A DNA stretch of 64,000 nt, from assembly GCA_950097015.1 (NCBI GenBank), contig CATNEN010000009.1, forward strand, positions 930,001 to 994,000. Reading direction: 5' to 3'. This DNA comes from Macrostomum hystrix. Taxonomy: Eukaryota; Animalia; Platyhelminthes. Of the stretch, positions 17,503 to 36,500 are shown piece by piece; position 1 is the first letter of the stretch; each line of letters opens with the position of its first letter. The translations under genes were made by a program, and so were the position numbers. The notes beneath the pieces were generated by a model. The model was given only the letters and a program-made list of their open reading frames with translations. It had not been told where the DNA came from and did no database searches.

Positions 17503-18006
17503 TCAGGTGAAGTACGGCGGCCGCTGCACATTGATGCCGCACTCCTGGAAGGCCGGGCCAAGGTCCTCCATGGTCAGTGTCAGCCGCTTGCCTGAGGAGC
17601 CACCGCCTGCTGCCGCTGCGGCTGTACCGGCAGCACCGCCGATTGCAGCGGCGCCGGCAGCCGCGGAGCCTCCAGCAGTCGAGGCTGCTGAGCCGCCGCC
17701 GCTGAGCCGCTTGAGCACCGGGCCGCCCTGCCTGGCGCGGCAGTGGTGCATGGCGTCACTGACAATGTCAGAGATAAACTTCTGGCCGGCCAGGGAGACC
17801 AGGCGCAGCAAGCGCTGGTCCGTGACCTCCAGGCCGCTGCGCTCCAAGTAGTACTGGGTCACGCGGTCCGGAATGGTCGGCTGGTACTCGTCCAGCTGAA
17901 GGAAGAAGTCAGACAGAGACACTGGCTGCTGGAACTGTGGCCGTTGCTGCTGCTGCTGCTGGTCAGTCGGCTGCGCCGAGGCGGCCTGGAAGCTCTCGTC
18001 ACCGTT
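17503..18006 (-). CDS. TAF10: TFIID subunit 10 (no genomic ATG; starts at acceptor 18007)
   Basis: LDEYQPTIPDRVTQYYLERSG...RLVSLAGQKFISDIVSDAMHHC...LTLTMEDL...GINVQRPPYF matches the TAF10 histone fold. Confidence 0.93.
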   Translation of the reverse strand, partial: NGDESFQAASAQPTDQQQQQQRPQFQQPVSLSDFFLQLDEYQPTIPDRVTQYYLERSGLEVTDQRLLRLVSLAGQKFISDIVSDAMHHCRARQGGPVLKRLSGGGSAASTAGGSAAAGAAAIGGAAGTAAAAAGGGSSGKRLTLTMEDLGPAFQECGINVQRPPYFT

Positions 18007-19421: not shown

Positions 19422-21206
19422 TCAACCGAGGGCTCCGTCGGGCTTTCGCTTTGGCAAAGACGCGATGCCGAAGCCGGCGGTCCCGGCGCCTCCGCCGAAG
19501 CCTCCAAACAACGAGGGGACAGTGCCGGTGCCGCCTGCGGCTGGCGCAGCGGCCGAGAAAGCCGAGAAGCCACCGAAGCCGCCACCGCCGATGCCGCCGA
19601 AGAGGGAGGGCGCAACGGCGGCCGGCTGGGTGACGGAGGCTGCAGCGGCCGCGGTGGCGGCGGCAGCTGCGGCGGCGGCGAGCGAGTCGTCGCAGGGCGG
19701 CGGTCCAAAGCCGGAACGGCGACCCCCGCTAGAGGAGGCGGCGCGAGGCGCTGACTGCTCGGCAAAGTCAGCGAAAGGATTGCGGAAGTCGCCGCGAGCC
19801 CGCCGGTAGGCCAGGAAGTTGGCGCGGAGCCGGTCGCAGGCGGAGCACGTGGCGCCAAGCTCGGCGGCGCAGGCGACGAGAGCTTCGCGGGCCTGCCGAA
19901 GGGCGTTCAGGAGCTCCTGCCCGCTGACGCGACCGCCGGAGCCGTCCAGGCAGAGCGCCGCCTCGAGGTCCTCGATCTCCGCCTTGAGCAGCCGGATCTT
20001 CCCGCCCGCCTCCGTCACCAGCCGGCCTAGCAGCTCCAGCGCCTCCTGGCTCTCCGCCTGCTGCCAGGCGGGCAGCTCGAAGCTTCTGCGGGCCACGGAC
20101 AGCTGCTGGCCGAGCTCGGCCAGGTCGCCGCGAAGCCTGACCGCGGCGCCGATGCTGGCAGCTCGGCTGGTGGCCAGCCGCCTGACCGACTGCGCCACTG
20201 ACTCCGCCTCCTCCGCCACGCGGCCGAGCTCCTGCGCCAGGCCGGCCCGCTCCGCCTCCATGCGGGCGCGCAGCTCGCGCTGGGACGTCAGGTGCCGGCG
20301 GAACGCCTCCACGGTGGCCAGGACCTCGTGAGGGATCTCCGACTCCAAAACGCTTTTCACCTCAGCGGCGCCCGAGCTGCCAGCCGTTCCGCCTGCGCCG
20401 CCGATGCCGAAGCCGCTGACGCCAGCTGCACCACTGCCGGCGGCACCACCAATTCCGCCTCCGACGCCTCCGCCAGGCAGGCTCGAACCCGGGACGCCGC
20501 CAAGTCCTCTGAATGCGGTCGCAGCTGCTGGAGCTGCCGCCGCCACCGCCAATCCGGCAGTCGCCGGGGTGCCCCCGGCAGTCGTTACCAAGGCGCCGAA
20601 AGAGAAATTGCCTGAGCCGAGTCCCGGAGCTGCGTTGGCAGCCGGCGCGGTCCCGAAGGACAGGCCGAGTGGCGGCTTGGCAGCCGGAGCTGCCATGGAG
20701 AACGTCGTAGTGGACGACAGATTCAGCCCGCCAATCGTTGACGACTGCGTTGCGGCTGGCGCGGTGGCTCCGCCGGGGGCTTTGCTGGCGGAGTTGGCCG
20801 CTGCGCCGAGGCCGAGGCCGAATGCGGGCGCTGCCGGCTTAGCCGCGGCCGCAGCGGGGGAGGCGCTAAAGCCAAAAGCTGACTGCTGCTGTTGCTGCTG
20901 CTGACCGGCGGTTGCCGCGTTCGGAGCGAAAGAGAAAGGCGTTGTTGACGACAGGTTGAGGCCAACGATGGTGGAGGATTGGCCGGCCGCTGCGGAGCCT
21001 CCGGCAGCTCCCGGCGTCCCGCTGGCAGCCGCTACTGAGGCTGCATCGGCAGCTCCGGTACCAGCGGTGCCAAACGCCGTCTGCGGTGGCACGGATAAGT
21101 TGAGGCTGCCCAGAGTGCTGGAACTGCCGGCGCTGCTCAGCGGAGCGACTGCGGCCAGCTTGGGGCCCGCCTGGCTGGCGCCGAATGCGAAGCCGGTGCT
21201 AGCCAT
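19422..21206 (-). CDS. NUP58: FG nucleoporin p58/p45
   Basis: FG-rich N- and C-termini; central coiled coil (KSVLESEIPHEVLATVEAFRRHL...LRANFLAYRRARGDFRNPF) resembles NUP58; single exon. Confidence 0.85.
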   Translation of the reverse strand: MASTGFAFGASQAGPKLAAVAPLSSAGSSSTLGSLNLSVPPQTAFGTAGTGAADAASVAAASGTPGAAGGSAAAGQSSTIVGLNLSSTTPFSFAPNAATAGQQQQQQQSAFGFSASPAAAAAKPAAPAFGLGLGAAANSASKAPGGATAPAATQSSTIGGLNLSSTTTFSMAAPAAKPPLGLSFGTAPAANAAPGLGSGNFSFGALVTTAGGTPATAGLAVAAAAPAAATAFRGLGGVPGSSLPGGGVGGGIGGAAGSGAAGVSGFGIGGAGGTAGSSGAAEVKSVLESEIPHEVLATVEAFRRHLTSQRELRARMEAERAGLAQELGRVAEEAESVAQSVRRLATSRAASIGAAVRLRGDLAELGQQLSVARRSFELPAWQQAESQEALELLGRLVTEAGGKIRLLKAEIEDLEAALCLDGSGGRVSGQELLNALRQAREALVACAAELGATCSACDRLRANFLAYRRARGDFRNPFADFAEQSAPRAASSSGGRRSGFGPPPCDDSLAAAAAAAATAAAAASVTQPAAVAPSLFGGIGGGGFGGFSAFSAAAPAAGGTGTVPSLFGGFGGGAGTAGFGIASLPKRKPDGALG

Positions 21207-22465: not shown

Positions 22466-24214
22466 TCACGTCTTCCGGAAAGCCTGCCTCTCCATGTCGC
22501 CATGCCGCCGCTGCACCTGACTGGCCCGCCGACGCACCGCCTCCTCCAGGCTGCACTCCGCCGACCGGTTCGCCAGGCCGCGAATTAACTCCCCGCCGGA
22601 GCTGACGTTGGCAGCTTCGCCACCGCTGTTTGCCAGCGCGGCCGCTGCGGCCGCCACACGCGATTCGAGCCTGGCACGCCGCTCCGCCTCGTGTTTGCGC
22701 GCGTCCTGCATCATCTCCTCTAGGCGGCGGGCCCGCTCCTCGGCGGCCGATGCTTTGGAAGCTTCTGGCGGAGAATGGGACTGACGGCTGGGCTTTGGTG
22801 ATTTGGCAGGCCGGTCTATGTGTCTCGGTGGTGACGCAGCTGATGACCGGTCTCTGTGTCTCGGTGGTGATGCAGCTGATGACCGGTCTCTGTGTCTCGG
22901 TGGTGATGCAGCTGATGACCGGTCTCTGTGTCTCGGTGGTGATGCAGCTGATGACCGGTCTCTGAGTCTCGGTGGTGATGCAGCTGATGACCGGTCTCTG
23001 TGTCTCGGTGGTGATGCAGCTGATGACCGGTCTCTGAGTCTCGGTGGTGATGCAGCTGATGACCGGTCTCTGTGTCTCGGTGGTGATGCTGCTGATGACC
23101 GGTCTCTGTGTCTCGGTGGTGACGCAGCTGATGACCGGTCTCTGTGTCTCGGTGGTGATGCAGCTGATGACCGGTCTCTGTGTCTCGGTGGTGATGCAGC
23201 TGATGACCGGTCTCTGTGTCTCGGTGGTGACGCAGCTGATGACCGGTCTCTGTGTCTCGGTGGTGACGCAGCTGATGACCGGTCTCTGTGTCTAGGAGGT
23301 GACGCAGCTGATGACCTTTCTCTGTATCGGGGCGGAGGCGACCTGTCATTCTGACGGTCTCTGTGTCGGGGCGGAGGCGACCTGTCATTCTGACGGTCTC
23401 TGTGTCGGGGCGGAGGCGACCTGTCATTCTGACGGTCTCTGTGTCGGGGCGGAGGCGACCTGTCATTCTGACGGTCTCTGTGTCGGGGCGGAGGCGACCT
23501 GTCATTCTGACGGTCTCTGTGTCGGGGCGGAGGCGACCTGTCATTCTGACGGTCTCTGTGTCGGGGCGGAGGCGACCTGTCATTCTGACGGTCTCTGCGG
23601 CTCACTGGCGAACGGTCTCCATCAAGGTCTCGCTGTCCCCGATCGGACGTCGCGGACTCCGCAGCCGGCTCCTTGTTCACAATGGCCAAGTACTGCTCAA
23701 GCAGCTCGTCTCCGCTGGACTCATCGGAGTCGGAGGAAGACGAGGAGCCGGACGAGGAAGAGGCGCCGGCCTTCTTCCTCTTCTTCTTCTTAGCCTTCTT
23801 ATCGCCCTTTCTCCGCTCCTTCCGCTGCATAGCCAGCGCCAGCTTGCGCATTCGCACCGGGTTCTGCTGCAGCCGGTGCAGCCGCTCAGCCTCCTGCTGC
23901 CTGATGAGAAACAGCGGGTCCTCCCGCATCTTGGCCTGCATGTCCAGCATGGCTCGCCGCTCGATGATGCCCGAGTCCAGCTCCTTAGTGACGCCCTGAA
24001 GCTTGGCCGAGTCGTCAATGGCAGCCAGCTTGGAGACGTCGGTGATGCGCTTGCCCCTGAGGTAGTCCTCAGCGCTGGGTCGGCTCATGTCTTCGTTGTA
24101 GAGAAACTCAACTCGCTGCTGCCCGTCTGAGGTGTACTTCTCCCTGAGCAGCTTCAGCATCTTCTCGCGCTCCTCCGAGTCCAGATGCTCCATGTCGGGC
24201 ACTTGGCGTGACAT
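22466..24214 (-). CDS. CWC25: Pre-mRNA splicing factor CWC25 homolog
   Basis: RVEFLY...EDYLRGKRI, LDMQAKMREDPLFLIRQQE...NPVRMRKL, K-rich/S-rich tract, C-terminal EERARRLEEMMQDA. Confidence 0.88.
   Translation of the reverse strand: MSRQVPDMEHLDSEEREKMLKLLREKYTSDGQQRVEFLYNEDMSRPSAEDYLRGKRITDVSKLAAIDDSAKLQGVTKELDSGIIERRAMLDMQAKMREDPLFLIRQQEAERLHRLQQNPVRMRKLALAMQRKERRKGDKKAKKKKRKKAGASSSSGSSSSSDSDESSGDELLEQYLAIVNKEPAAESATSDRGQRDLDGDRSPVSRRDRQNDRSPPPRHRDRQNDRSPPPRHRDRQNDRSPPPRHRDRQNDRSPPPRHRDRQNDRSPPPRHRDRQNDRSPPPRHRDRQNDRSPPPRYRERSSAASPPRHRDRSSAASPPRHRDRSSAASPPRHRDRSSAASPPRHRDRSSAASPPRHRDRSSAASPPRHRDRSSAASPPRHRDRSSAASPPRLRDRSSAASPPRHRDRSSAASPPRLRDRSSAASPPRHRDRSSAASPPRHRDRSSAASPPRHRDRSSAASPPRHIDRPAKSPKPSRQSHSPPEASKASAAEERARRLEEMMQDARKHEAERRARLESRVAAAAAALANSGGEAANVSSGGELIRGLANRSAECSLEEAVRRRASQVQRRHGDMERQAFRKT
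22816..23595 (-). repeat. Coding minisatellites in CWC25: 39-bp (RDRQNDRSPPPRH) x7 and 36-bp (RDRSSAASPPRH) x about 14
   Basis: Both units are multiples of 3 and remain open in the CWC25 frame. Confidence 0.9.
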
Positions 24215-24929: not shown

Positions 24930-25750
24930 GCTGTCAATCAGCAGCCTCAGCTGTCAATCAGCAGCCTCAGCTGGCAATCAGCAGCCTCAGCTGGCAATCA
25001 GCAGCCTCAGCTGTCAATCAGCAGTCTCAGCTGGCAATCAGCAGCCTCAGCTGTCAATCAGCAGCCTCAGCTGGCAATCAGCAGCCTCAGCTGTCAATCA
25101 GCAGCCTTAGCTGTTAATCAGCAGCCTCAGCTGTCAATCAGCAGCCTTAGCTGTTAATCAGCAGCCTCAGCTGTCAATCAGCAGCCTTAGCTGTTAATCA
25201 GCAGCCTCAGCTGTCAATCAGCAGCCTTAGCTAACAATCAGCAGCCTCAGCTGTCAATCAGCAGCCTTAGCTGTTAATCAGCCTCTAAAAACAAGTCAGC
25301 CAATCAGCAGCCTCAGCTGTTAATCAGCAGCCTTAGCGGTTAATCAGCAGCCTCAGCTGTCAATCAGCAGCCTTAGCTGTTAATCAGCAGCCTCAGCTGT
25401 CAATCAGCAGCCTTAGCTGTTAATCAGCAGCCTCAGCTGTCAATCAGCAGCCTTAGCTAACAATCAGCAGCCTCAGCTGTCAATCAGCAGCCTTAGCTGT
25501 TAATCAGCCTCTAAAAACAAGTCAGCGAATCAACAGCCTCAGCAGCCAATCAGCCTCTAAAAACAAGTCAGCGAATCAACAGCCTCAGCAGCCAATCAGC
25601 CTCTAAAAACAAGTCAGCGAATCAACAGCCTCAGCTGTTAATCAGCCTCTAAAAACAAGTCAGCGAATCAACAGCCTCAGCAGCCAATCAGCCTCTAAAA
25701 ACAAGTCAGCGAATCAACAGCCTCAGCAGCCAATCAGCCTCTAAAAACAA
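24930..25750. repeat. Composite 20-bp and 45-bp minisatellite starting at the IDI1 stop
   Basis: AATCAGCAGCCTCAGCTGTC units grading into CTAAAAACAAGTCAGCGAATCAACAGCCTCAGCAGCCAATCAGCCT-type units. Confidence 0.9.
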
Positions 25751-25751
25751 G

Positions 25752-27287
25752 TCAGCCAAACAGCAGCCGCCGGTGCTTGTCCAGCACCAACTCGAACCAG
25801 GGCGTGGGCGGTTGGCCGGCAGCGCGCCGCTCTGACAGGAACTCGTCCAGCTGGGAATCTGACAGCCAAGCCGTCTCGACCACCTCGTTGGGATCCGGGC
25901 GCAGGCTGTCAGTGACTGCCGAGTCGGGCAGCCGCAGGCGCAGCAGGTGGTCGACCTCGTGCTCGGCCCAGTCGCCAGTTGAGTCGCAGTCGGCCTGGTA
26001 CACAATGGTTGCCAGGTGGTCAATGGCTTCTACGGGCAGCTGCAGGCCCAGCTCAAGCCGAGTCCGCCTGACTGCGGCCAGCTTCACACCCACACCTGCG
26101 GGCAGGGCGGATAATCAGCTGTTCTCATTGTGCATTCACTCAGATTCTCATTGTGTGTTCACTCAGATTCTCATTGTGTGTTCACTCAGATTCTCATTGT
26201 GTGTTCACTCAGATTCTCATTGTGTGTTCACTCAGATTCTCATTGTGTGTTCACTCAGATTCTCATTGTGTGTTCACTCAGATTCTCATTGTGTGTTCAC
26301 TCAGATTCTCATTGTGTGTTCGATCAGATTCTCATTGTGTGTTCACTCAGATTCTCATTGTGTGTTCACTCAGATTCTCATTGTGTGTTCACTCAGATTC
26401 TCATTGTGTGTTCACTCAGATTCTCATTGTGTGTTCACTCAGATTCTCATTGTGTGTTCACTCAGATTCTCATTGTGTGTTCACTCAGATTCTCATTGTG
26501 TGTTCACTCAGATTCTCATTGTGTGTTCACTCAGATTCTCATTGTGTGTTCACTCAGATTCTCATTGTGTGTTCACTCAGATTCTCATTGTGTGTTCACT
26601 CAGATTCTCATTGTGTGTTCACTCAGATTCTCATTGTGTGTTCACTCAGATTCTCATTGTGTGTTCACTCAGATTCTCATTGTGTGTTCACTCAGATTCT
26701 CATTGTGTGTTCACTCAGATTCTTATTGTGTGTTCACTCATTCTCATTGTGTATTCTAAGCCTCAGATCTCACTGTCCCGAGCCTCAGATCTCACTGTCC
26801 CCAGCCTCAGATCTCACTGTCCCCAGCCTCAGATCTCACTGTCCCCAGCCTCAGATTTCACTGTCCCCAGCCTCAGATATCACTGTCCCCAGCCTCAGAT
26901 CTCACTGTCCCCAGCCTCAGATCTCACTGTCCCTAGCCTCAGATCTCACTGTCCCCAGCCTCAGATCTCACTGTCCCCAGCCTCAGATCTCACTGTCCCC
27001 ACCATCGCCGCACCTGGCTGCAGCTCCTCGGCGGTGTGCAGGGGGTGTGAGCAGCATGAGTTGGTCCAGCGGCCCGGGAAGGTGAGCTTAAGCAAGGAGC
27101 GGCGCTGAAGCAGCAAGCGGTCCCGGCTGTCCATCAGGAAGAGGCTGAAGGCGCGGTGCAGGGCTTTGCCGGCGCGGACGTTGTCAGCCCGGTGGCAGAA
27201 CTCCTTGCTGGCGGCGCCGAGGACGCGATCGGTGGAGTCAACCAGGATGCACGGCTCCGACAGCAGCGCCGCTTGCGAAGGGTGCAT
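25752..27287 (-). CDS. IDI1: Isopentenyl-diphosphate delta-isomerase, 2 exons (27287-27014, 26095-25752); possible extension to 27383
   Basis: CILVDSTDRVLG, LHRAFSLFL, LLLQRRS..KLTFPGRWTNSCCSHP, RLELG, WAEHEVDHLL, PDPNEV, TPWF. Phase-1 GT-AG junction keeps frame. Confidence 0.95.
26118..27000. repeat. Two adjacent intronic minisatellites (23-bp TTCACTCAGATTCTCATTGTGTG and 22-bp CAGCCTCAGATCTCACTGTCCC)
   Basis: Fill the IDI1 intron; long plus-strand ORFs here are artefacts. Confidence 0.96.
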
Positions 27288-28109
27288 CGGCGTCTTCGAA
27301 AACGTTGCCGAGCTACTGGACGATGACAGAAGGCGCTGTGGGCAGCACCTGCGAAGACTGGCGATGGCCAAAGTGACGCGTGGCTGAAATGAGACATGAT
27401 AGGTACGGGGTTGAGATTTGGATCCGCATCCACTTGAAAACTAACATTAAACCTACAGCAGCAGCAGCAGCAGCCAGTCCCAGCAGTGCTCCGGCACATC
27501 ATAGCAGTCATAGCAGTGAAAGTGCAGCCAGCGGAGGGATTAACCGGGAATTCTCGACTCGGCTTTCCTCGCTACTCGCATCTCCCCAACCTCGGGGAAG
27601 GAATAACAGCAGGTGCTGAGAGCAGATTAGCCTGAGCAGGCCAGCACTCAGCACTTCCCCCCATCGCAGCGCTAATAGTCCCAACTGATTGCATTCCAAT
27701 AAGAATGCCCAGCTCACCCATTCTGGCACTCGGCCATCGCTTCCCCTGCCCCTGAAGGCCTGGTATTCACTCCGCGGATTTCATCCGCCCCGGCACGAGC
27801 TCAACAGCCAGCCAAAACAGCCGCGCACCAATGAAAAGCTTCAAAGCCAAGCCGACGGAAGCAGCTGAGCAACAATGACCGGCTTTTTATTGTAAGCCAT
27901 TTTTTAACAAGAGACAGACAGACAGAATACTTTCATTTGTTAATGACAGCGTGCGGGCACATCACAATGGCTTGAGTTGCAGTAAATCATAAGTTAGCGG
28001 CATCAGAACTATTGCTTTGATATAATAACCTAACTAAGAATATGTTCAACACAATAGACACTTCCAACACCTTAACTAGAGACTTGTCAATCAAAATGAG
28101 GATACGGAA

Positions 28110-28720
28110 AGTGACTTATCAAACTAATTGGCGACAAAGATCTCACATGACTTATCAAACTAATTGGTAATAAAGATCTCACATGACTTATCAAACTAAT
28201 TGGTGATAAAGATCTCACATGACTTATCAAACTAATTGGTGACAAAGATCTCACATGACTTATCAAACTAATTGGTGATAAAGATCTCACATGAATTATC
28301 AAACTAATTGGTGATAAAGATCTCACATGAATTATCAAACTAATTGGTGATAAAGATCTCACATGAATTATCAAACTAATTGGTGATAAAGATCTCACAT
28401 GAATTATCAAACTAATTGGTAATAAAGATCTCACATGTCTTATCAAACTAATTGGTGACAAAGATCTCACATGACTTATCAAACTAATTGGTGATAAAGA
28501 TCTCACATGACTTATCAAACTAATTGGTGACAAAGATCTCACATGACTTATCAAACTAATTGGTGATAAAGATCTCACATGACTTATCAAACTAATTGGT
28601 GATAAAGATCTCACATGTCTTATCAAACTAATTGGTGATAAAGATCTCACATGTCTTATCAAACTAATTGGTGACAAAGATCTCACATGACTTATCAAAC
28701 TAATTGGTGATAAAGATCTC
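28110..28720. repeat. 36-bp minisatellite ACATGACTTATCAAACTAATTGGTGATAAAGATCTC
   Basis: About 17 copies between BLOC1S6 and IDI1. Confidence 0.96.
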
Positions 28721-28903
28721 CCATGCGCTCGTAAGAGTTGAAATATGAAAAAATAGCAACAATTTTTACACAGGAAGCAAATGGAACAAAAAATCTTTGA
28801 TATGAATTTACAATTGATAGCAAAGCAGCGAACGGTTAGAGAGGGAATGCCCATTGTGCCAGATACACCAGCACACAATCGCAGGCCAGATGTCAGCCCC
28901 GGT

Positions 28904-29383
28904 CTAGGAGGAGGCAGAGGCCTTTGCCGCCGGCTCGGCTGGCCGGGCGATGAGCTGCCGCTCGGCCTCGAGCTCCCGCTCGCGTTCCGCCTGGCGCTTG
29001 AGCAGCTCCGTCTGCTTGGCCTGCTGCAGCTGGATGGCTCGCTTCTTCAGCCGCTGCAGCCGCTCGGCCTGGCGCTGCATCTCCTTGCGCATGCGGCCCA
29101 GCCGCTGCTGGTACTCCCGCACCTGCTCCAGGCGGCAGTCCATCTCCTGCAGGCCGGAGCAGTCCGCCAGGCGGGCCCGCTCGTGCTGGATGCTCTCCAG
29201 GAACGACTGCTGGCAGGTCAGCAGCTCCGACAGCGCTGACTCGCGCGCTGACAGGCCTGGACGGTGGAAGGCCAGCGCGCCGGCTGCCAGAGCGTCTATG
29301 GTGGCAGTCGCGGCGGTGTCGGCAGCGTCGGAGGAGGTGGCAGCCGGTACGGCCGCGGAATCCGTGGTGCTCGATGCCTCAGA
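28904..29383 (-). CDS. BLOC1S6: BLOC-1 subunit 6 (pallidin); no genomic ATG at the 5' end
   Basis: LAAGALAFHRPGL..RESALSELLTCQQSFLESIQHE...YQQRLGRMRKEM...RLKKRAIQLQQ...ERQLIARPA parallels pallidin. Confidence 0.88.
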   Translation of the reverse strand, partial: SEASSTTDSAAVPAATSSDAADTAATATIDALAAGALAFHRPGLSARESALSELLTCQQSFLESIQHERARLADCSGLQEMDCRLEQVREYQQRLGRMRKEMQRQAERLQRLKKRAIQLQQAKQTELLKRQAERERELEAERQLIARPAEPAAKASASS

Positions 29384-29444
29384 CTGCGGGTGTTCAGAAG
29401 ATGTACAGAGAGAAGTGTTTACAGGATAGCCTGTGTTGTTGTTG

Positions 29445-29660
29445 GATGGGATAGGGTGTTAAGAGGATGGGGTAGGGTGTTAAGAGGATGGGGTAGGGTG
29501 TTAAGAGGATGGGGTAGGGTGTTAAGAGGATGGGGTAGGGTGTTAAGAGGATGGGGTAGGGTGTTAAGAGGATGGGGTAGGGTGTTAAGAGGATGGGGTA
29601 GGGTGTTAAGAGGATGGGGTAGGGTGTTAAGAGGATGGGGTAGGGTGTTAAGAGGATGGG
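29445..29660. repeat. 21-bp minisatellite GGGGTAGGGTGTTAAGAGGAT
   Basis: About 10 copies upstream of the BLOC1S6 acceptor. Confidence 0.95.
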
Positions 29661-30349
29661 GCATTTACAGGATGGACAGGGTTTATCCTATTTGGGCAGG
29701 CTACAGTAAAAATTAAGCAAGCCAGTGAGACGATCGCAATGAGTACGTAACGGTAGCATAATATATATTAATAATGAATAGTTAGACAGTCAGTTAATAT
29801 AGTGCGGTCTCGCTCTCTAGCAGAAATGTAAGTAATGTGTACACAACCTGGTGACGCGGGATGCTTGAGAAGCCGGGCAGCAAAAACACGAGAGGCGAAC
29901 TTACAATTGGTCACAGAACAATTTGCTTCTACCGCATTGTAACAGTTTAGGAGGCAAATAAGAAGCGAATAAAATAATGAATAACAATTCTATGAAACTT
30001 TCGCCTAGCTATCACTAACATACTACTAACCGCAGCAGTTCAGTAGTGTTTGATGATCATCCATCTGTTTACACTGAACTAACAATAATAGAAATAATAA
30101 GAACTCGGAATTCTAATATGATTATGCAGACAGCAGGGCCGGTGAAATCACAGTTTAAGACGAGGAACAACAAAAAAATGCTTAGGCAACACTGTCATGC
30201 AATATAAGCACAGGAGCAATTAAAAGATAATAAACAACTGTGTGCCTTGGGTTCGACACCTGCTTGGTGCAGTAATAATTCATTACACCTGCCCCAATTA
30301 GGCCAGATGTGCAGCCGCCAGCGCAGCAGCAGCTATTGCGCGGCGCATC

Positions 30350-30560
30350 TGAAGGCTCCATACGGCTGTTCAGTCCATGGACTGGGGAGCACAACACCCA
30401 CCCTCCATTTCCCCTCCTGATGCTGGTTGGTACCCATTCAACAGCTGCTTGAACTCAAGCAATGCAGAGTTAAGTGTCTTGCTAAAAGACACAAATTGTA
30501 CCAATGAATGCGGGAATCGAACCCCCGACCTTCAAGTCTTAACCGGCACCATTTAGTGCA
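30350..30560 (-). mobile_element. tRNA-derived SINE, family B
   Basis: Reverse strand reads GGTCGGGGGTTCGATTCCC...GTGTCTTTTAGCAAGACACTTAAC...AATGGGTACC...CCCCAGTCCATGGACTGAACAG. Confidence 0.7.
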
Positions 30561-30954
30561 GTGTTAAGTCTGGGTATAGTTACTCATTTGCCCCTTAAAT
30601 GCCGAATTCAAAGTCATATTCTCTATTCGCTCCAATCAGGTAAATCGTAGAGTAAGATATCTGTAAGGTGCGCCACAACATCGAATTATAGCGTGGGTAA
30701 AGTGAGCGAAAAAGCTGAAACTGTCAGCAGCAATGATGCTACTGTAAGTAGTGAAGGTATTGTTCTAGCAGCAATTATTAACTAGGGCATGTTAGGCAAA
30801 GCAGTTAAATGGATAGCAGGTTAAATTAACTCGATGCAAGACTGCAGTTGGACTAGATTAATGCAGGGCTGATTACACATGCTTAGAGTGTGCCAAGCGG
30901 TTTTCAAAGCCGTTTGCTAGATAGTTTTATTACCCTCATCTTACAGCCTGTACA

Positions 30955-31415
30955 ATGTGTTTATAAACCTGTAAAATGTGTTCATAAGCCTGTAAAATGT
31001 GTTCATAAGCCTGTAAAATGTGTTCATAAGCCTGTAAAATGTGTTCATGAGCCTGTAAAATGTGTTCATTACTCTATTCCAACAGTGAGTACCACAGTGA
31101 GTACTTATTACTCATAAGTAAGATCTAGTGGCAGCGCTCATTACCCACACCTTACAGGAAGTAACACAGTGCTCATTACCCACACCTTACAGGCAGTAAC
31201 ATAGTGCTCATTACCCACACCTTACAGGAAGTAACACAGTGCTCATTACCCACACCTTACAGGCAGTGACACAGTGCTCATTACCCACACCTTACAGGAA
31301 GTAACACAGTGCTCATTACCCACACCTTACAGGCAGTAACACAGTGCTCATTACCCACACCTTACAGGCAGTGACACAGTGCTCATTACCCACTCCTTAC
31401 AGGCAGTAACACAGC
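30955..31415. repeat. 21-bp (CCTGTAAAATGTGTTCATAAG) and 35-bp (CAGTGCTCATTACCCACACCTTACAGGCAGTAACA) arrays
   Basis: Downstream of the DnaJ stop. Confidence 0.9.
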
Positions 31416-31510
31416 AGGCCAAAGTTAATCCGGAATGAAGGGGACAAGAGGACAAACAACAGTTCGCGTCAACAGTCTGATCTGTGAGCTGCTGATCCCA
31501 GTCTGGGAAT

Positions 31511-33359
31511 CTACTTGAACAGCTCGCCGAACAGACCGCCCAGTCCGCTCTTCTTAGGCGAGTTGTTGACACTGGTTACCGTTCCGTGCTTGACCTGGGC
31601 GGCCGCTATGAATTCCTGGTAGTTGAGCTCGCGCTGCCGGATGAGGTCTTGCACCTCCTTGGTCTCTGTCTCCAGCTTCTGGCAAGCGGCCTGGTACTTC
31701 CTGACTGCCTCCATGTACTCGTCCTTGAACTTGGCCAGCTCCTCCTTCTTGGTGCGCAAGCTGGCCTCAACTGACTTGATCTGCTGCACCGGCTGACAGT
31801 TGGAGGGCTCGCCAACCAGCATGCGCAGCGAGTACTTCACGTCCTGCAGCCAGTTGTCACCGTACAGGCAGACCAGATGCTTGCCCGGCTGCAGGGTGAT
31901 GCTGTGAGCGGGCTCGTACATGTGCAGCAGGTAGAAGCTGATGGGCGTGTCCTTGTCCTCCTGCAGGCCAGTCAGCGAGCGGAAATGATAGATCGAGTAG
32001 AGCTAATGGGGAACTGGTGAGGATTCGTGGAACTGGTGAGGATTTGGGGAACTGGTGAGGATTTGGGGAACTGGTGAGGATTTGGGGAACTGGTGAGGAT
32101 TCGTGGAACTGGTGAGGATTCGTGGAACTGGTGAGGATTTGGGGAACTGGTGAGGATTTGGGGAACTGGTGAGGATTCGTGGAAGTGGTGAGGATTTGGG
32201 GAACTGGTGAGGATTTGGGGAACTGGTGAGGATTTGGGGAACTGGTGAGAATTTGGGGAACTGGTGAGGATTTGGGGATCTAATTAGAATGAGAATCTAA
32301 ATGAGGATGGGATCTAATGAGGATGGGATCTGATGAGGATTGGGGATCTGGTGGAGATAGGGTAGCTGAGGATTGGGGATCTGATAAGGATCTGGGTATC
32401 TGATGGGGATCAGGGCCCTGATTATTACTTCGGATATTCAATGAGGGATCTGAGCAAGACTTATAAAACTGATACTTTGTACACAAACACATTGTGTGAG
32501 CCTCACAATCAGCAAAAGACAATAACTAACATTACCTGAAGGAAGCGCAGCGGGAACAGTTCGGACAGGTGCATGCGGTCGAAGGGCACCAGAAACATGT
32601 CAGCGTGCGTCCCGGATGGCCGGCCGGCGCCGCTGCGGCAGGACTCCTCGATGGTGCGCACTTCGCCCTCCTTGTCGAACACCACGAGCTTGAACTTGGA
32701 GGAGGAGGCGCTGTGGGCCAGCAGCAGGACTCCGTTAGCTGCGGCAGCCTCGTCAACCGTCAGCCAGTAGAACCTGGCCGACTGGCGTTCCACGCGGTCC
32801 TCCACCTGCCTGCAAGATTGACAGAAAATGCTTAGCAAATACCATAGATAATACCTTCTGCCTACTGACAGTAGCGTGGTAAGCTACTTCAGCGTCAGCC
32901 AATCAAAAATCCGAACCTTCCGGGCACCAGCGTGGCGACCGTGTCCGGTGGCGTCTCGCCCGTCACCAACTGGCGCGCCTGCGACAAAACCTTCGGCGCA
33001 ATCTGGGTGGGTATCGGCACGCCGAGGCTGCTGAACAAAGCGCCGAAGACTCGCCCGAGGCCGCCGACCTCGTCCATGTTGACACCCTCGAAGTCCATAA
33101 GGTTGGTGCCTTCGCCGAGCTGGCGGCCGCGGTCATACTGGTGGCGCTTGTTGGGGTCGCTCAGCACGGCGTAGGCGATGCTGACCTCCTTGAAGCGTTC
33201 GGCAGCGGCCGGGTTTCCGGGGTTCTTGTCTGGATGCAGCCGGATGGCGAGCTTCCTGTAAGCGTTCTTGATCTCCGCCGCGCTGGCCGTCTTTTCAACA
33301 CCCAGCAGTTCATAGTAGTCCGCCCGCTTGCTGCCTCCATTGCTGCCCCCGCTGGCCAT
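31511..33359 (-). CDS. DnaJ protein of the ARG1/DnaJ15-16 type, 3 exons (33359-32917, 32809-32536, 31960-31511)
   Basis: J domain with HPD (DYYELLGV...[14 protein letters not shown]), [21 protein letters not shown] motif, C-terminal coiled coil. Splice phases (2, 0) consistent. Confidence 0.9.
32025..32280. repeat. 19-bp intronic minisatellite GGGGAACTGGTGAGGATTT
   Basis: In DnaJ intron 2. Confidence 0.95.
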
Positions 33360-33434
33360 CGCTGCTGCTGCTGTTGTTGCTTTTAACTTGCTATTCGAGA
33401 AGAAACTTAAGCCAACTGAAATTTAAGCAATTAT

Positions 33435-33585
33435 AGTGATTTGAGTGTCGGACTCACAACTTGAAGCTCGTGGGTTCGATTCCCGACTCCACTGGAACTG
33501 TGTCATTTAGCATCTTGACAAACCACTTGGATAGCAGCATTAGCTGGGATAATTGATGGTGGGTGTGGCATCTCCCCAGTCAATA
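33435..33585 (+). mobile_element. tRNA-derived SINE, family B (partial)
   Basis: GGGTTCGATTCCCGACTCC B-box and GGTGGGTGTGGCATCTCCCCAGTC tail like the other copies. Confidence 0.55.
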
Positions 33586-36500
33586 GTCAATTATTGTTAT
33601 TTATGAATTACAATTACAGCCATGAAAGCTAATAGACACTTGATAAAATCCCTTTAAAACTTTTCATGTCACAGAAAGCATTTTAAGTTTATTTATTCAA
33701 CCACTTTCATTTTACACTTACATTAGTTAGACTGTAGTATGTTGCTACTGCAGTCTAACTAATGAACTGCTTTCCAAGCTTGCTTAGGTTTGGAATTGTT
33801 ATTGGAGTTGAAGACAGTGAAGATGTCAGGCTGGTCTATATAAGGCTCTTTGTCCCAGGCAAGGTGAAAAGCACATTCTGCCTTTTTTGCAAACTAAAAA
33901 ATCACAACTATTGACAGCCAATTTGGCAAACAGCTACATCATACAATGACAACTGCATATTATAGTTAAATTGTTATTATCATAGCTACTGCTCTAGATA
34001 AATCAATAGCTATATTTTTAATTGGCTTTTTGTATTAGGAATATGCCTTAGTAAGCACCAAATAGCAATAACAATATAATACAACCAATAGTTCATTTGA
34101 TAGATTTAGAAATGCAACCACATAAAATTTGTCTAACTCATTGTAGTATCATGAAGATTGAAGAGTTAAATAAAAGAGATATTATTCATTAAAACTTAAT
34201 CTAGACCATTTTATTTTGTTTTTAGCTACCAAAAAGCCTATTATATGTATAACTAAAACAATTGTTCACAGGGGCACCACATATCAAGAGATTTTTTGTC
34301 TCAGTTTCATGGAAAGCTTTAAAACAATAATCAATAATTTTTTGATACTTCAAAATGTATATTTTGGTGGATAAGAAATGACTAAGTAAATAGTTTTAAT
34401 GAATACACTTAAACTATAATTGAACCTATGCGAACATTTGTAGTATTTCAAGCACATCAAATTTACAATTGATACTTTTTGTGATTGGTTGAGCAGTTTT
34501 ATTATAGCTTGTACTTAAAAATGTCACTTCTGACTTCTCATCTCAGATCTTGTACTCAACCAAATTTCAATTTCTGATGGTTCTAATTGCTAATAGCCAA
34601 TAGCCAGCAATAATAAACAAAAGCTACATAGTCTTGAACCATAAATAGTAACAGTAGGTTTGCTAAGCCATTTGCTATTTATTCAATTATGTAAATATGT
34701 ATATAAACAGATCAAATAGATTATTGTAAATGGGAAAATTGGACTTTAGGCTTGAACCATTGTATTGGATTTTCTTGCCTCAGATACTTGTCTAAGTCAG
34801 TTTTTCAGTGTCTACTGTATACTATATTTGCATTTTACCTGTTTATTCAAATAAATAATATATTTAACTGGAACAATAATGTTCCTTTTAGAAGCTTCTT
34901 GGTATATCATTTACCGTATTTGAAGGCTACATAGAGCCATATAGGAGTTTAAGTGATGTCACATTCATTAGAACAGCAATCAGGCTTTCACAATGAAACA
35001 ACCATGCTGTACTGGCTTCATAATTACTATAGCTAATGTTGGCATTCCTTCAGTTTATGATCATTTTTTCACCCATATTTCGGTTTATGATCCCCATGTA
35101 TTTTTCCAATTCAGTAATCATGGCCTGCTTGAAAGAAGCAAAAATTGAGAAACCAGGATTATTTGTTACACTAAAACCCCCTACCTTCGTTACACAATCA
35201 TTTACATGTATTTCTGCCATTTAAATGATCATAATCTGAAGTGGATATATAGGATCCTCTTCATGGAACAGTTCTGAAACAAGTTCTGTAACAAGCAACT
35301 CTTTCAATTTGATGAATGTACGCGAATGAGCAGATCTCTTTGCATTGTTTCATTCTGGTTGGCATTTGATCGTTTGACAACAAAAAAATAAAAAGGCTTG
35401 GAGTGATTTTCAGTGCTGGTTTAAAATATGATTAAAACATGAATTTCTTACTCTTGTGTATCTTTCTTATGGGGATCGTCACCAATTTCAGGGATTGTAA
35501 ACCAAAGGAATGCTGCCAATGTCTATGATAACAAGGCCTGACTAATGCCTACCCACTAGCAAACAAATAACCAATGCGCTGACTCTACCACCATGGGGGC
35601 TTGGGCCATGTTAAACATAACTATAGTACCTGGTAAATTTCATTTATGTAAATAAACAAATGAAAAAGACAGTTGGCATTGAAAACAGACTCAGACAAGT
35701 GAAAAAATGAGAATACAATTTCTCTGCTAAAAAATCTTTTCAACAGAAAAATACAGAAAAAAAATGATAAAGATTCTGTTTCTACTCTTTGACTGTCTTT
35801 CTAAACAAGGATCATATAATGAAAGTGTTTAAAAACTGGGATAGTAGAATGAAAGAATGTCAATATCACATATGTTAGGGCCTATATCTATTAGCTAATT
35901 GTTGCTAGGGGCTTAATAATACTATATAAAAGTAATAGTAATTTATTCTCCAAGACATTGACTAATTATAATAAATAAAGTTAGGTCTAGTCTAGTTAAT
36001 TTGCAATTATTTGGAAGCAATTTCAAAACTAAAGGTTATTCTAAAAATTGACCTTGAATAGAGAATAAGGCAAGAGGCCATAATAATTGGTGCTTAATTT
36101 CCCACCCTAGGCTACAGACTACTGAACTACTTGCCCACTTGATTCCTGAAGATTACAGTCACAAAAGTAGTAGTAGTAGATTGTTTGGCTCTAGCCAAAA
36201 AAGAAATTGACGTCAGAATTTAAATTTTGGAATGAATTCATCGTTTAAAACGAAAAAGGCGAATAGAGTTTATTAAGTGATTATGCTCAAGCACTTGTAG
36301 AATACGTGTCGTTTAAAATGTTATATGTATTATTTTATCAGTTCACTATTTCAGTTATTAATAACCTTGGCTACTTTTTAATTGTAGCTAATTTTGTTTG
36401 CACAGTTGACTTAATTGCCTTTAAATTTTAACGCTATGCACCATTTAAATAACTTTTCTTTACATTGAAATTATAAAGCAAGCACTCTCTCATTATCTCA

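What the first reader, a model, noticed from the sequence alone, without database searches (positions are those of the whole stretch)
28904..29460. BLOC1S6 conserved N-terminal half lacks an ATG; a phase-0 acceptor gives M-SEASS
Seen: the first in-frame ATG (29143) lies after pallidin-like sequence (LAAGALAFHRPGL...). Upstream the frame closes with TAA in the 21-bp repeat, with no ATG in between. The acceptor CTTCTGAACACCCGCAG (ends 29384) is exactly 240 nt (phase 0) upstream of that ATG. Adding an SL AUG gives a natural N-terminus, MSEASSTTDS. This is a second independent case in the same cluster.
Basis: partly seen in the sequence, partly recalled or inferred. Interest (0 to 1): 0.75.

Follow-up and report, generated by a model that had tools for sequence, protein, structure and literature searches.

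The report
Pallidin gene borrows its start codon
A conserved flatworm gene (BLOC1S6/pallidin of Macrostomum lignano) has no start codon of its own for its conserved front half, and RNA data show that the spliced leader, which ends in AUG, is joined exactly in frame at the predicted site; this is a well-supported new example of a mechanism known in flatworms since 2006.

Summary

- **Gene:** The minus-strand exon 29383-28907 encodes 159 codons of a Snapin/Pallidin-domain protein. The domain covers residues 30-120. The first genomic in-frame ATG (29143) is codon 81, and the frame is closed upstream by a TAA at 29461-29459.
- **Organism:** Macrostomum lignano.
- **RNA evidence:** Assembled contigs from three public runs of one study cover 28730-29384 without a mismatch. 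They then continue into 22-24 letters that are the 3' end of the published 35-nt M. lignano spliced leader. The junction reads ...TTGCATG|TCTGAGGCA, so the leader's AUG is in frame (M-SEASS...). The leader is not encoded in the window.
- **Second copy:** A diverged, syntenic second copy in the same genome has the same build: a phase-0 CCGCAG acceptor, an upstream in-frame stop and no ATG. Codons 30-80 are under purifying selection (pN/pS 0.22).
- **No upstream exon:** No conserved block lies between the upstream gene and the acceptor, so there is no sign of an upstream cis exon.
- **What is inferred:** Translation from the leader AUG is inferred, not shown.
- **Novelty:** The mechanism is known (Cheng et al. 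2006, Schistosoma). This scan has also noted many similar cases elsewhere in this genome. This is a new member of a known kind.

The parts
29444..29661 (.). 21-bp tandem repeat (10.4 copies) in the outron just upstream of the acceptor. On the gene strand it carries an in-frame TAA in every unit.
   Evidence: TRF; translation
29459..29461 (-). Last in-frame stop (TAA) upstream of the acceptor. It closes the reading frame 25 codons before the exon.
29384..29400 (-). Trans-splice acceptor CTTCTGAACACCCGCAG, with the AG at 29385-29384. SL-bearing contigs break from the genome exactly here.
   Evidence: read laying loose ends at 29384 in X3, X4, X5. The CCGCAG|TC core is conserved in the second copy.
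28907..29383 (-). Single coding exon of BLOC1S6 (pallidin), 159 codons beginning SEASSTTDS. With the leader's AUG this gives a 160-aa protein.
29024..29296 (-). Snapin/Pallidin domain (residues 30-120). 51 of its 91 codons lie upstream of the first genomic ATG.
   Evidence: Pfam PF14712 E 5.9e-14. Invariant Q58 and E68 and near-invariant P42 in the orthologue alignment A1.
29141..29143 (-). First genomic in-frame ATG (codon 81). Starting here would give a 79-aa fragment lacking about 60% of the domain.
28904..28906 (-). Stop codon TAG.
28730..28903 (-). 3' UTR covered by the same contigs. The contigs run a further 39-57 nt past 28730 into the 36-bp repeat. The true 3' end was not determined.
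   Evidence: table 8
28112..28725 (.). 36-bp tandem repeat (17 copies) downstream of the gene, partly within the transcript's 3' end.

Best explanation
This is the Macrostomum lignano BLOC1S6 (pallidin) gene, a single coding exon on the minus strand. Its pre-mRNA is SL trans-spliced at the AG at 29385-29384. The 35-nt spliced leader ends in AUG, and the acceptor is in phase 0. The leader's AUG therefore becomes the first and only AUG ahead of the conserved reading frame, and it serves as the initiator codon of a 160-aa protein (M+SEASS...).

Shown: the gene identity, the absence of a genomic start codon, the SL junction and its frame, and conservation of the arrangement in a diverged second copy.

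Inferred: ribosomes start at the SL AUG. This rests on the scanning model, on selection acting on the upstream codons, and on the experimental precedent in Schistosoma (Cheng et al. 2006).
For: 1. Three runs hold contigs of 716-734 nt at word depth 29-41. They match 28730-29384 with 0 mismatches and then carry 22-24 nt identical to the 3' end of the published SL. The junction is ...TTGCATG|TCTGAGG.
2. The SL is absent from the 64-kb window, so the join is in trans.
3. In the SL-joined mRNA the SL AUG is the only ATG before 29143. All four ATGs in the first 400 nt are in frame 0, and the SL AUG opens a 160-codon ORF.
4. The Pfam domain covers residues 30-120. 189 homologues were found at E<=0.001, and most of them align from about residue 20-30. 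The named ones are BLOC-1 subunit 6 of an annelid, a nemertean, molluscs and insects. Their total lengths (149-238 aa) match a 160-aa product.
5. The second copy, L001 (NIVC01002284.1), is flanked by the same genes (DnaJ upstream, NUDIX downstream). It has CACCGCAG|TCGGAT in phase 0, an in-frame TGA 9 codons upstream and no ATG until the same LQEM. NCBI annotates it as 'partial'.
6. Between the two copies, codons 30-80 show pS 0.35 and pN 0.076 (ratio 0.22), so this stretch evolves as coding sequence.
7. There is no conserved block between the upstream gene and the exon.
8. Literature: all reported flatworm SLs end in AUG, and this AUG can act as initiator (Cheng et al. 2006, cited in PMC9851317 and PMC12582326). 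The Macrostomum genome paper itself notes that the final ATG of the SL is a likely start codon (PMC10468722).
Against: - There is no protein-level or ribosome-profiling evidence.
- The RNA support comes from assembled contigs of one study only. The runs' library kind is not on record, although an SL junction can only come from RNA.
- Contigs drop rare isoforms.
- The SL AUG has a weak vertebrate-type context (T at -3, T at +4), so some leaky scanning to 29143 is possible.
- The acceptor (CCGCAG) fits the published M. lignano trans-acceptor motif [T/C]TNCAG only in part.
Confidence: 0.86

Rival explanations
1. The protein starts at the first genomic ATG (29143), giving a 79-aa C-terminal coiled-coil fragment. 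The 240 nt upstream would then be a 5' UTR that merely resembles pallidin.
For: ATG 29143 and two further in-frame ATGs exist, and no out-of-frame ATG precedes them. The SL AUG context is weak, so leaky scanning could add this product as a minor form.
Against: The SL AUG is upstream, in frame and reached first. The 79-aa form keeps only profile positions 55-89 and falls below the Pfam cut-off. Codons 30-80 are under purifying selection (pN/pS 0.22) and hold invariant orthologue residues Q58 and E68.
Confidence: 0.05
2. A cis-spliced upstream exon, somewhere in 29400-31500 or beyond, supplies the ATG in a second isoform.
For: Contigs do not exclude rare isoforms. A low-depth contig in X3 (depth 4.1) reads through the acceptor into the upstream repeat.
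Against: No joint is seen at 29384 other than to the SL. The read-through contig is collinear with the genome, which points to unspliced precursor, and that frame holds a TAA. No conserved block lies between 31511 and 29316 in the comparison with the second copy. The second copy shows the same lack of an ATG.
Confidence: 0.04
3. Initiation occurs at a near-cognate codon inside the exon (ACG at codon 7, or CUG at codon 32 or 37), independent of the SL.
For: Several in-frame CTG codons and one ACG lie before codon 81.
Against: It is unnecessary, because an in-frame AUG precedes them on the observed mRNA. Orthologue homology already starts at about residue 20-30.
Confidence: 0.03
4. This is a decaying gene copy (pseudogene) that lost its start codon.
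For: M. lignano is a hidden polyploid with redundant copies (PMC10468722 abstract). The window copy has no exact match in the protein collection.
Against: It is expressed and processed and has an intact 159-codon frame. pN/pS is 0.23 overall against the other copy. Both copies share the ATG-less build, so it predates their divergence.
Confidence: 0.02

Closest known systems
[quoted passage not shown] I know this paper only as cited in PMC9851317 and PMC12582326.
   Same: The SL ends in AUG and the acceptor is in phase, so the SL AUG opens the conserved ORF. The recipient gene has no start codon of its own for the conserved N-terminus.
   Different: The species is a free-living macrostomorph and the gene is different. 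No translation experiment was done here. [quoted passage not shown] No such count exists for M. lignano in the papers I read.
slORFs (ORFs created by SL addition; slORFfinder, PMC9851317)
   Same: The start codon is supplied by the leader and the ORF is missed by genome-only annotation. The second copy is filed as 'partial'.
   Different: slORFs in nematodes, Oikopleura and trypanosomes mostly use near-cognate NUG codons and are often alternative ORFs. Here a true AUG opens the main conserved ORF.
BLOC1S6 / pallidin, subunit 6 of the BLOC-1 complex
   Same: It has the Snapin/Pallidin coiled-coil domain, a comparable length, and best named homologues that are all BLOC1S6.
   Different: The N-terminal 29 residues are Ala/Ser/Thr-rich and poorly conserved even between the two M. 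lignano copies (pN 0.34). There is no genomic start codon.

Membership tests
SL-donated initiator AUG (flatworm type) | The species' spliced leader ends in AUG. | tested here: met
   The published SL ends ...TTGCATG (PMC8629364). The same letters are seen in the contigs.
SL-donated initiator AUG (flatworm type) | The SL is found joined to this mRNA at a defined acceptor. | tested here: met
   Loose ends at 29384 in X3, X4 and X5, three runs of one study. The SL is absent from the window.
SL-donated initiator AUG (flatworm type) | The SL AUG is in frame with the conserved ORF, with no stop between them. | tested here: met
   ATG|TCT GAG...; 160-codon ORF.
SL-donated initiator AUG (flatworm type) | Conserved protein sequence lies upstream of the first genomic in-frame ATG, and the frame is closed upstream of the acceptor. 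| tested here: met
   Domain residues 30-120 against the ATG at codon 81; TAA at 29461-29459.
SL-donated initiator AUG (flatworm type) | Translation actually starts at the SL AUG. | not testable with these tools
   This needs proteomics, ribosome profiling or a reporter. Only indirect support is available: pN/pS 0.22 for codons 30-80.
BLOC1S6 (pallidin) | Snapin/Pallidin domain above Pfam's gathering score. | tested here: met
   52.7 bits against a cut-off of 29.6.
BLOC1S6 (pallidin) | Closest named relatives are BLOC1S6 rather than Snapin. | tested here: met
   Six of the ten top clusters looked up are named BLOC-1 subunit 6, and no name given is Snapin. No formal reciprocal search or tree was made.
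BLOC1S6 (pallidin) | Assembles into the BLOC-1 complex. | not testable with these tools
   No solved structure was found by sequence.
Downstream gene of an M. lignano operon (criterion of PMC8629364: repeat-adjusted distance under 1 kb to the upstream same-strand gene) | Repeat-adjusted intergenic distance below 1000 bp. | tested here: inconclusive
   The upstream stop at 31511 is 2127 nt from the acceptor at 29384. TRF arrays in between total about 626 nt, leaving about 1500 nt. The upstream 3' UTR length and the transposon content are unknown.

The most novel reading that the evidence does not exclude
Loss of the gene's own start codon is an old, selectively kept state. It is shared by two copies that have diverged to pS 0.42 (JC-corrected dS about 0.6). 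Full-length pallidin would then depend strictly on trans-splicing: unspliced or alternatively processed transcripts could yield only the 79-aa C-terminal fragment, so trans-splicing would act as an on/off or isoform switch for protein output. This scan has noted many similar ATG-less genes in this genome. M. lignano may therefore carry an unusually large class of obligately SL-initiated conserved genes.
Probability: 0.25. Interest if true: 0.5.

Novelty: new member of a known kind. Interest (0 to 1): 0.3.

Why it matters
- **Annotation.** Genome-only or SL-trimmed gene models of Macrostomum truncate such genes or mark them 'partial'. This happened to the second copy, BOX15_Mlig020879g1. Recognising phase-0 SL acceptors fixes the N-terminus.
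- **Experiments in this model flatworm.** Transgenes, knock-ins, N-terminal tags and antibodies for BLOC1S6 must take into account that Met1 is not in the genome.
- **Biology.** This is one more documented case, outside the parasitic flatworms, that the conserved 3' AUG of flatworm spliced leaders is likely used as a start codon. The arrangement persists across an old duplication.
- **Principle.** It does not change any principle.

Tried and rejected
- **Word-indexed protein search.** It found only the second copy. The exhaustive search was needed to find orthologues.
- **Solved structures by sequence.** Nothing relevant was found; the only hit was a chance coiled-coil match at E 0.79.
- **Exact look-up of the 159-aa exon product.** It is not on record. 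This is expected, because a caller working on SL-bearing contigs would add the Met.
- **Joined model.** I joined the published SL to the exon only inside a local script, to list ATGs and frames.
- **Run X1 (another organism label).** It covers only 28730-28896 and 29012-29187, so it says nothing about the junction.
- **The 34-nt pieces at 29036-29069.** They sit inside about 2.5-kb contigs and are a chance match of a CAG/CTG-rich stretch to another transcript. I ignored them.
- **Jukes-Cantor correction for codons 1-29.** It failed because of saturation, so I give raw proportions.
- **Rejected readings.** Pseudogene, non-AUG start and cis upstream exon are treated under the rivals.

Full report
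**What is in the sequence**

The gene reads on the minus strand. The reading frame runs from 29458 to the TAG at 28906-28904. It contains no ATG, GTG or TTG before 29143, and the ORF listing therefore reports only a 79-aa ORF, 28904..29143. Upstream, the frame is closed by a TAA at 29461-29459. That TAA sits in the last unit of a 21-bp tandem repeat at 29444-29661. The string CTTCTGAACACCCGCAG ends at 29384. The next base, 29383, is 240 nt (80 codons) before the ATG.

**What the gene is**

- The 159 codons from 29383 match Pfam Snapin_Pallidin (PF14712) at E 5.9e-14 and 52.7 bits, against a cut-off of 29.6. The match covers residues 30-120.
- An exhaustive HMMER search gave 189 homologues at E<=0.001, and most align from about residue 20-30 to about residue 150.
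- I looked up the ten best clusters. Six are named BLOC-1 subunit 6, from Owenia, Lineus, Ostrea, Anabrus, Gigantopelta and Thrips, and no name given is Snapin.
- In an alignment of 17 sequences, invariant Q58 and E68 and near-invariant P42 lie upstream of the first genomic Met, which is codon 81.
- A protein started at 29143 keeps only profile positions 55-89 and scores 24 bits, below the cut-off.
- The only close relative is a Macrostomum lignano protein filed as 'partial', BOX15_Mlig020879g1. This identifies the organism.

**The RNA evidence**

The sequencing-run search returned four runs that hold at least half of the sampled words of the stretch (X3-X6), all from one study. I laid X3, X4 and X5 of these, plus X1, on 28730-29443.

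- In X3, X4 and X5, one contig each (716-734 nt, word depth 29-41) matches 28730-29384 without a mismatch.
- Each contig then continues with 22-24 letters that are not in the window. On the + strand these are ATGCAATAAATTGAGTCTTCGC(AG).
- Reverse-complemented, and joined to the shared G at 29384, this is ...CTGCGAAGACTCAATTTATTGCATG. That is the 3' end of the published 35-nt M. lignano spliced leader CGGTCTCTTACTGCGAAGACTCAATTTATTGCATG (PMC8629364).
- The leader has no match in the window even with two mismatches allowed. The join is therefore in trans.
- The mature mRNA reads ...UUGCAUG|UCU GAG GCA UCG, so the leader's AUG is in frame with S-E-A-S-S.
- X3 also holds a 112-nt, low-depth (4.1) contig that runs collinearly through the acceptor into the repeat. 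This is most simply unspliced precursor.
- The short length of leader seen is what a k-mer assembly is expected to give, because the leader is shared by thousands of transcripts (my inference).
- The three runs belong to one study, so they count as one independent source.

**Frame and start-codon logic**

I joined the published SL to the exon inside a local script only. In that mRNA the SL AUG is the only ATG before 29143. It opens a 160-codon ORF. All ATGs in the first 400 nt are in frame 0. Under the scanning model, ribosomes meet the SL AUG first. The AUG context is weak by vertebrate rules (T at -3 and +4), so a minor 79-aa product by leaky scanning cannot be excluded.

**Evolutionary test**

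The M. lignano assembly GCA_002269645.1 holds a second copy, L001 on contig NIVC01002284.1. It has the same neighbours in the same order: a DnaJ-domain gene upstream and a NUDIX gene downstream.

- The copies are well diverged: pS 0.42 overall, JC-corrected dS about 0.6.
- The second copy nevertheless has the same build. It shows CACCGCAG|TCG GAT in phase 0, an in-frame TGA nine codons upstream, and no ATG until the same LQEM position.
- Similarity between the two loci begins at the CCGCAG|TC core.
- Codons 30-80, the domain part that has no genomic start codon ahead of it, show pS 0.35 and pN 0.076 (ratio 0.22). Codons 81-159 show a ratio of 0.12. The low-complexity first 29 codons are much freer (pN 0.34).
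- A blastn comparison of window 25500-34500 (minus strand) with L001 finds only the coding exons of the three genes. Nothing is conserved between 31511 and 29316.

**Comparison with what is known**

- All reported flatworm spliced leaders end in AUG. Cheng et al. (J Biol Chem 2006) showed in Schistosoma mansoni that this AUG can act as initiator. There, 28% of trans-spliced mRNAs have it in frame and more than 40 cDNAs need it. I take these figures from PMC9851317 and PMC12582326; I did not read the original paper.
- In M. lignano, 30% of genes are trans-spliced to a single SL (PMC8629364).
- The Macrostomum cliftonense/hystrix genome paper remarks that the SL's final ATG is a likely translation start codon (PMC10468722).
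- In the papers I read, I found no gene-by-gene account of SL-initiated genes in Macrostomum, and none for BLOC1S6.
- This scan's own notes list many similar candidates elsewhere in this genome. One of them was followed up with the same conclusion (s1-270681).
- The present case is a well-documented new member of a known kind, not a new mechanism.

**Operon context**

The upstream same-strand gene ends at 31511, which is 2127 nt from the acceptor. Tandem arrays account for about 626 nt of that distance. The published operon criterion is under 1 kb after subtracting repeats. That criterion is neither clearly met nor clearly failed, because the upstream 3' UTR and the transposon content are unknown. 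I did not test the TAF10 or EDEM1 cases named in neighbouring notes.

**Verdict**

- Observation: confirmed.
- Interpretation: supported.
- Trans-splicing at the predicted phase-0 acceptor is shown.
- Initiation at the SL AUG is a strong inference (about 0.86).
- Interest is modest (0.3). The main value is for annotation and for experimental design in this model flatworm.

Noticed in passing
window 25500-34500 (minus strand) versus L001 1-10471: The window and contig NIVC01002284.1 are collinear duplicated loci with the order DnaJ-domain gene, BLOC1S6, NUDIX gene. Only coding exons are still alignable (78-89% identity). All intergenic DNA has turned over, which fits the hidden polyploidy of M. 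lignano.
   Followed up: partly
window 29444-29661; L001 3981-4870: In both copies a C-rich tandem repeat lies directly upstream of the trans-splice acceptor. The units are unrelated: 21 bp x 10 in the window and 30 bp x 30 in L001. This may only reflect the repeat-rich intergenic DNA described for M. lignano operons, or it may be a pyrimidine-rich outron feature.
   Followed up: no
window 28112-28725: A 36-bp x 17 tandem repeat starts about 180 nt after the stop codon. The mRNA contigs run 39-57 nt into it and then stop. The polyadenylation site could not be placed, and no AATAAA is obvious in 28730-28903.
   Followed up: no
window 17503-17922 (minus strand): This ORF is a TAF10 domain protein (Pfam E 1.4e-34) that the ORF listing starts at a GTG. 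A neighbouring note proposes an SL-donated AUG here as well.
   Followed up: no
window 28730-28896 and 29012-29187: Run X1, which carries a different organism label, holds this gene with a few differences: C>T at 28833, T>C at 29139 and two single-base indels in the 3' UTR. This points to another strain or a close relative.
   Followed up: no
window 19422-21206, 22466-24214, 31511-33359 (all minus strand): The same-strand neighbours are an FG-nucleoporin-like ORF, a CWC25 splicing-factor ORF and a DnaJ-domain gene. Together with TAF10, NUDIX and BLOC1S6 they form a one-strand run of housekeeping genes, the candidate operon of note s1-258455.
   Followed up: partly
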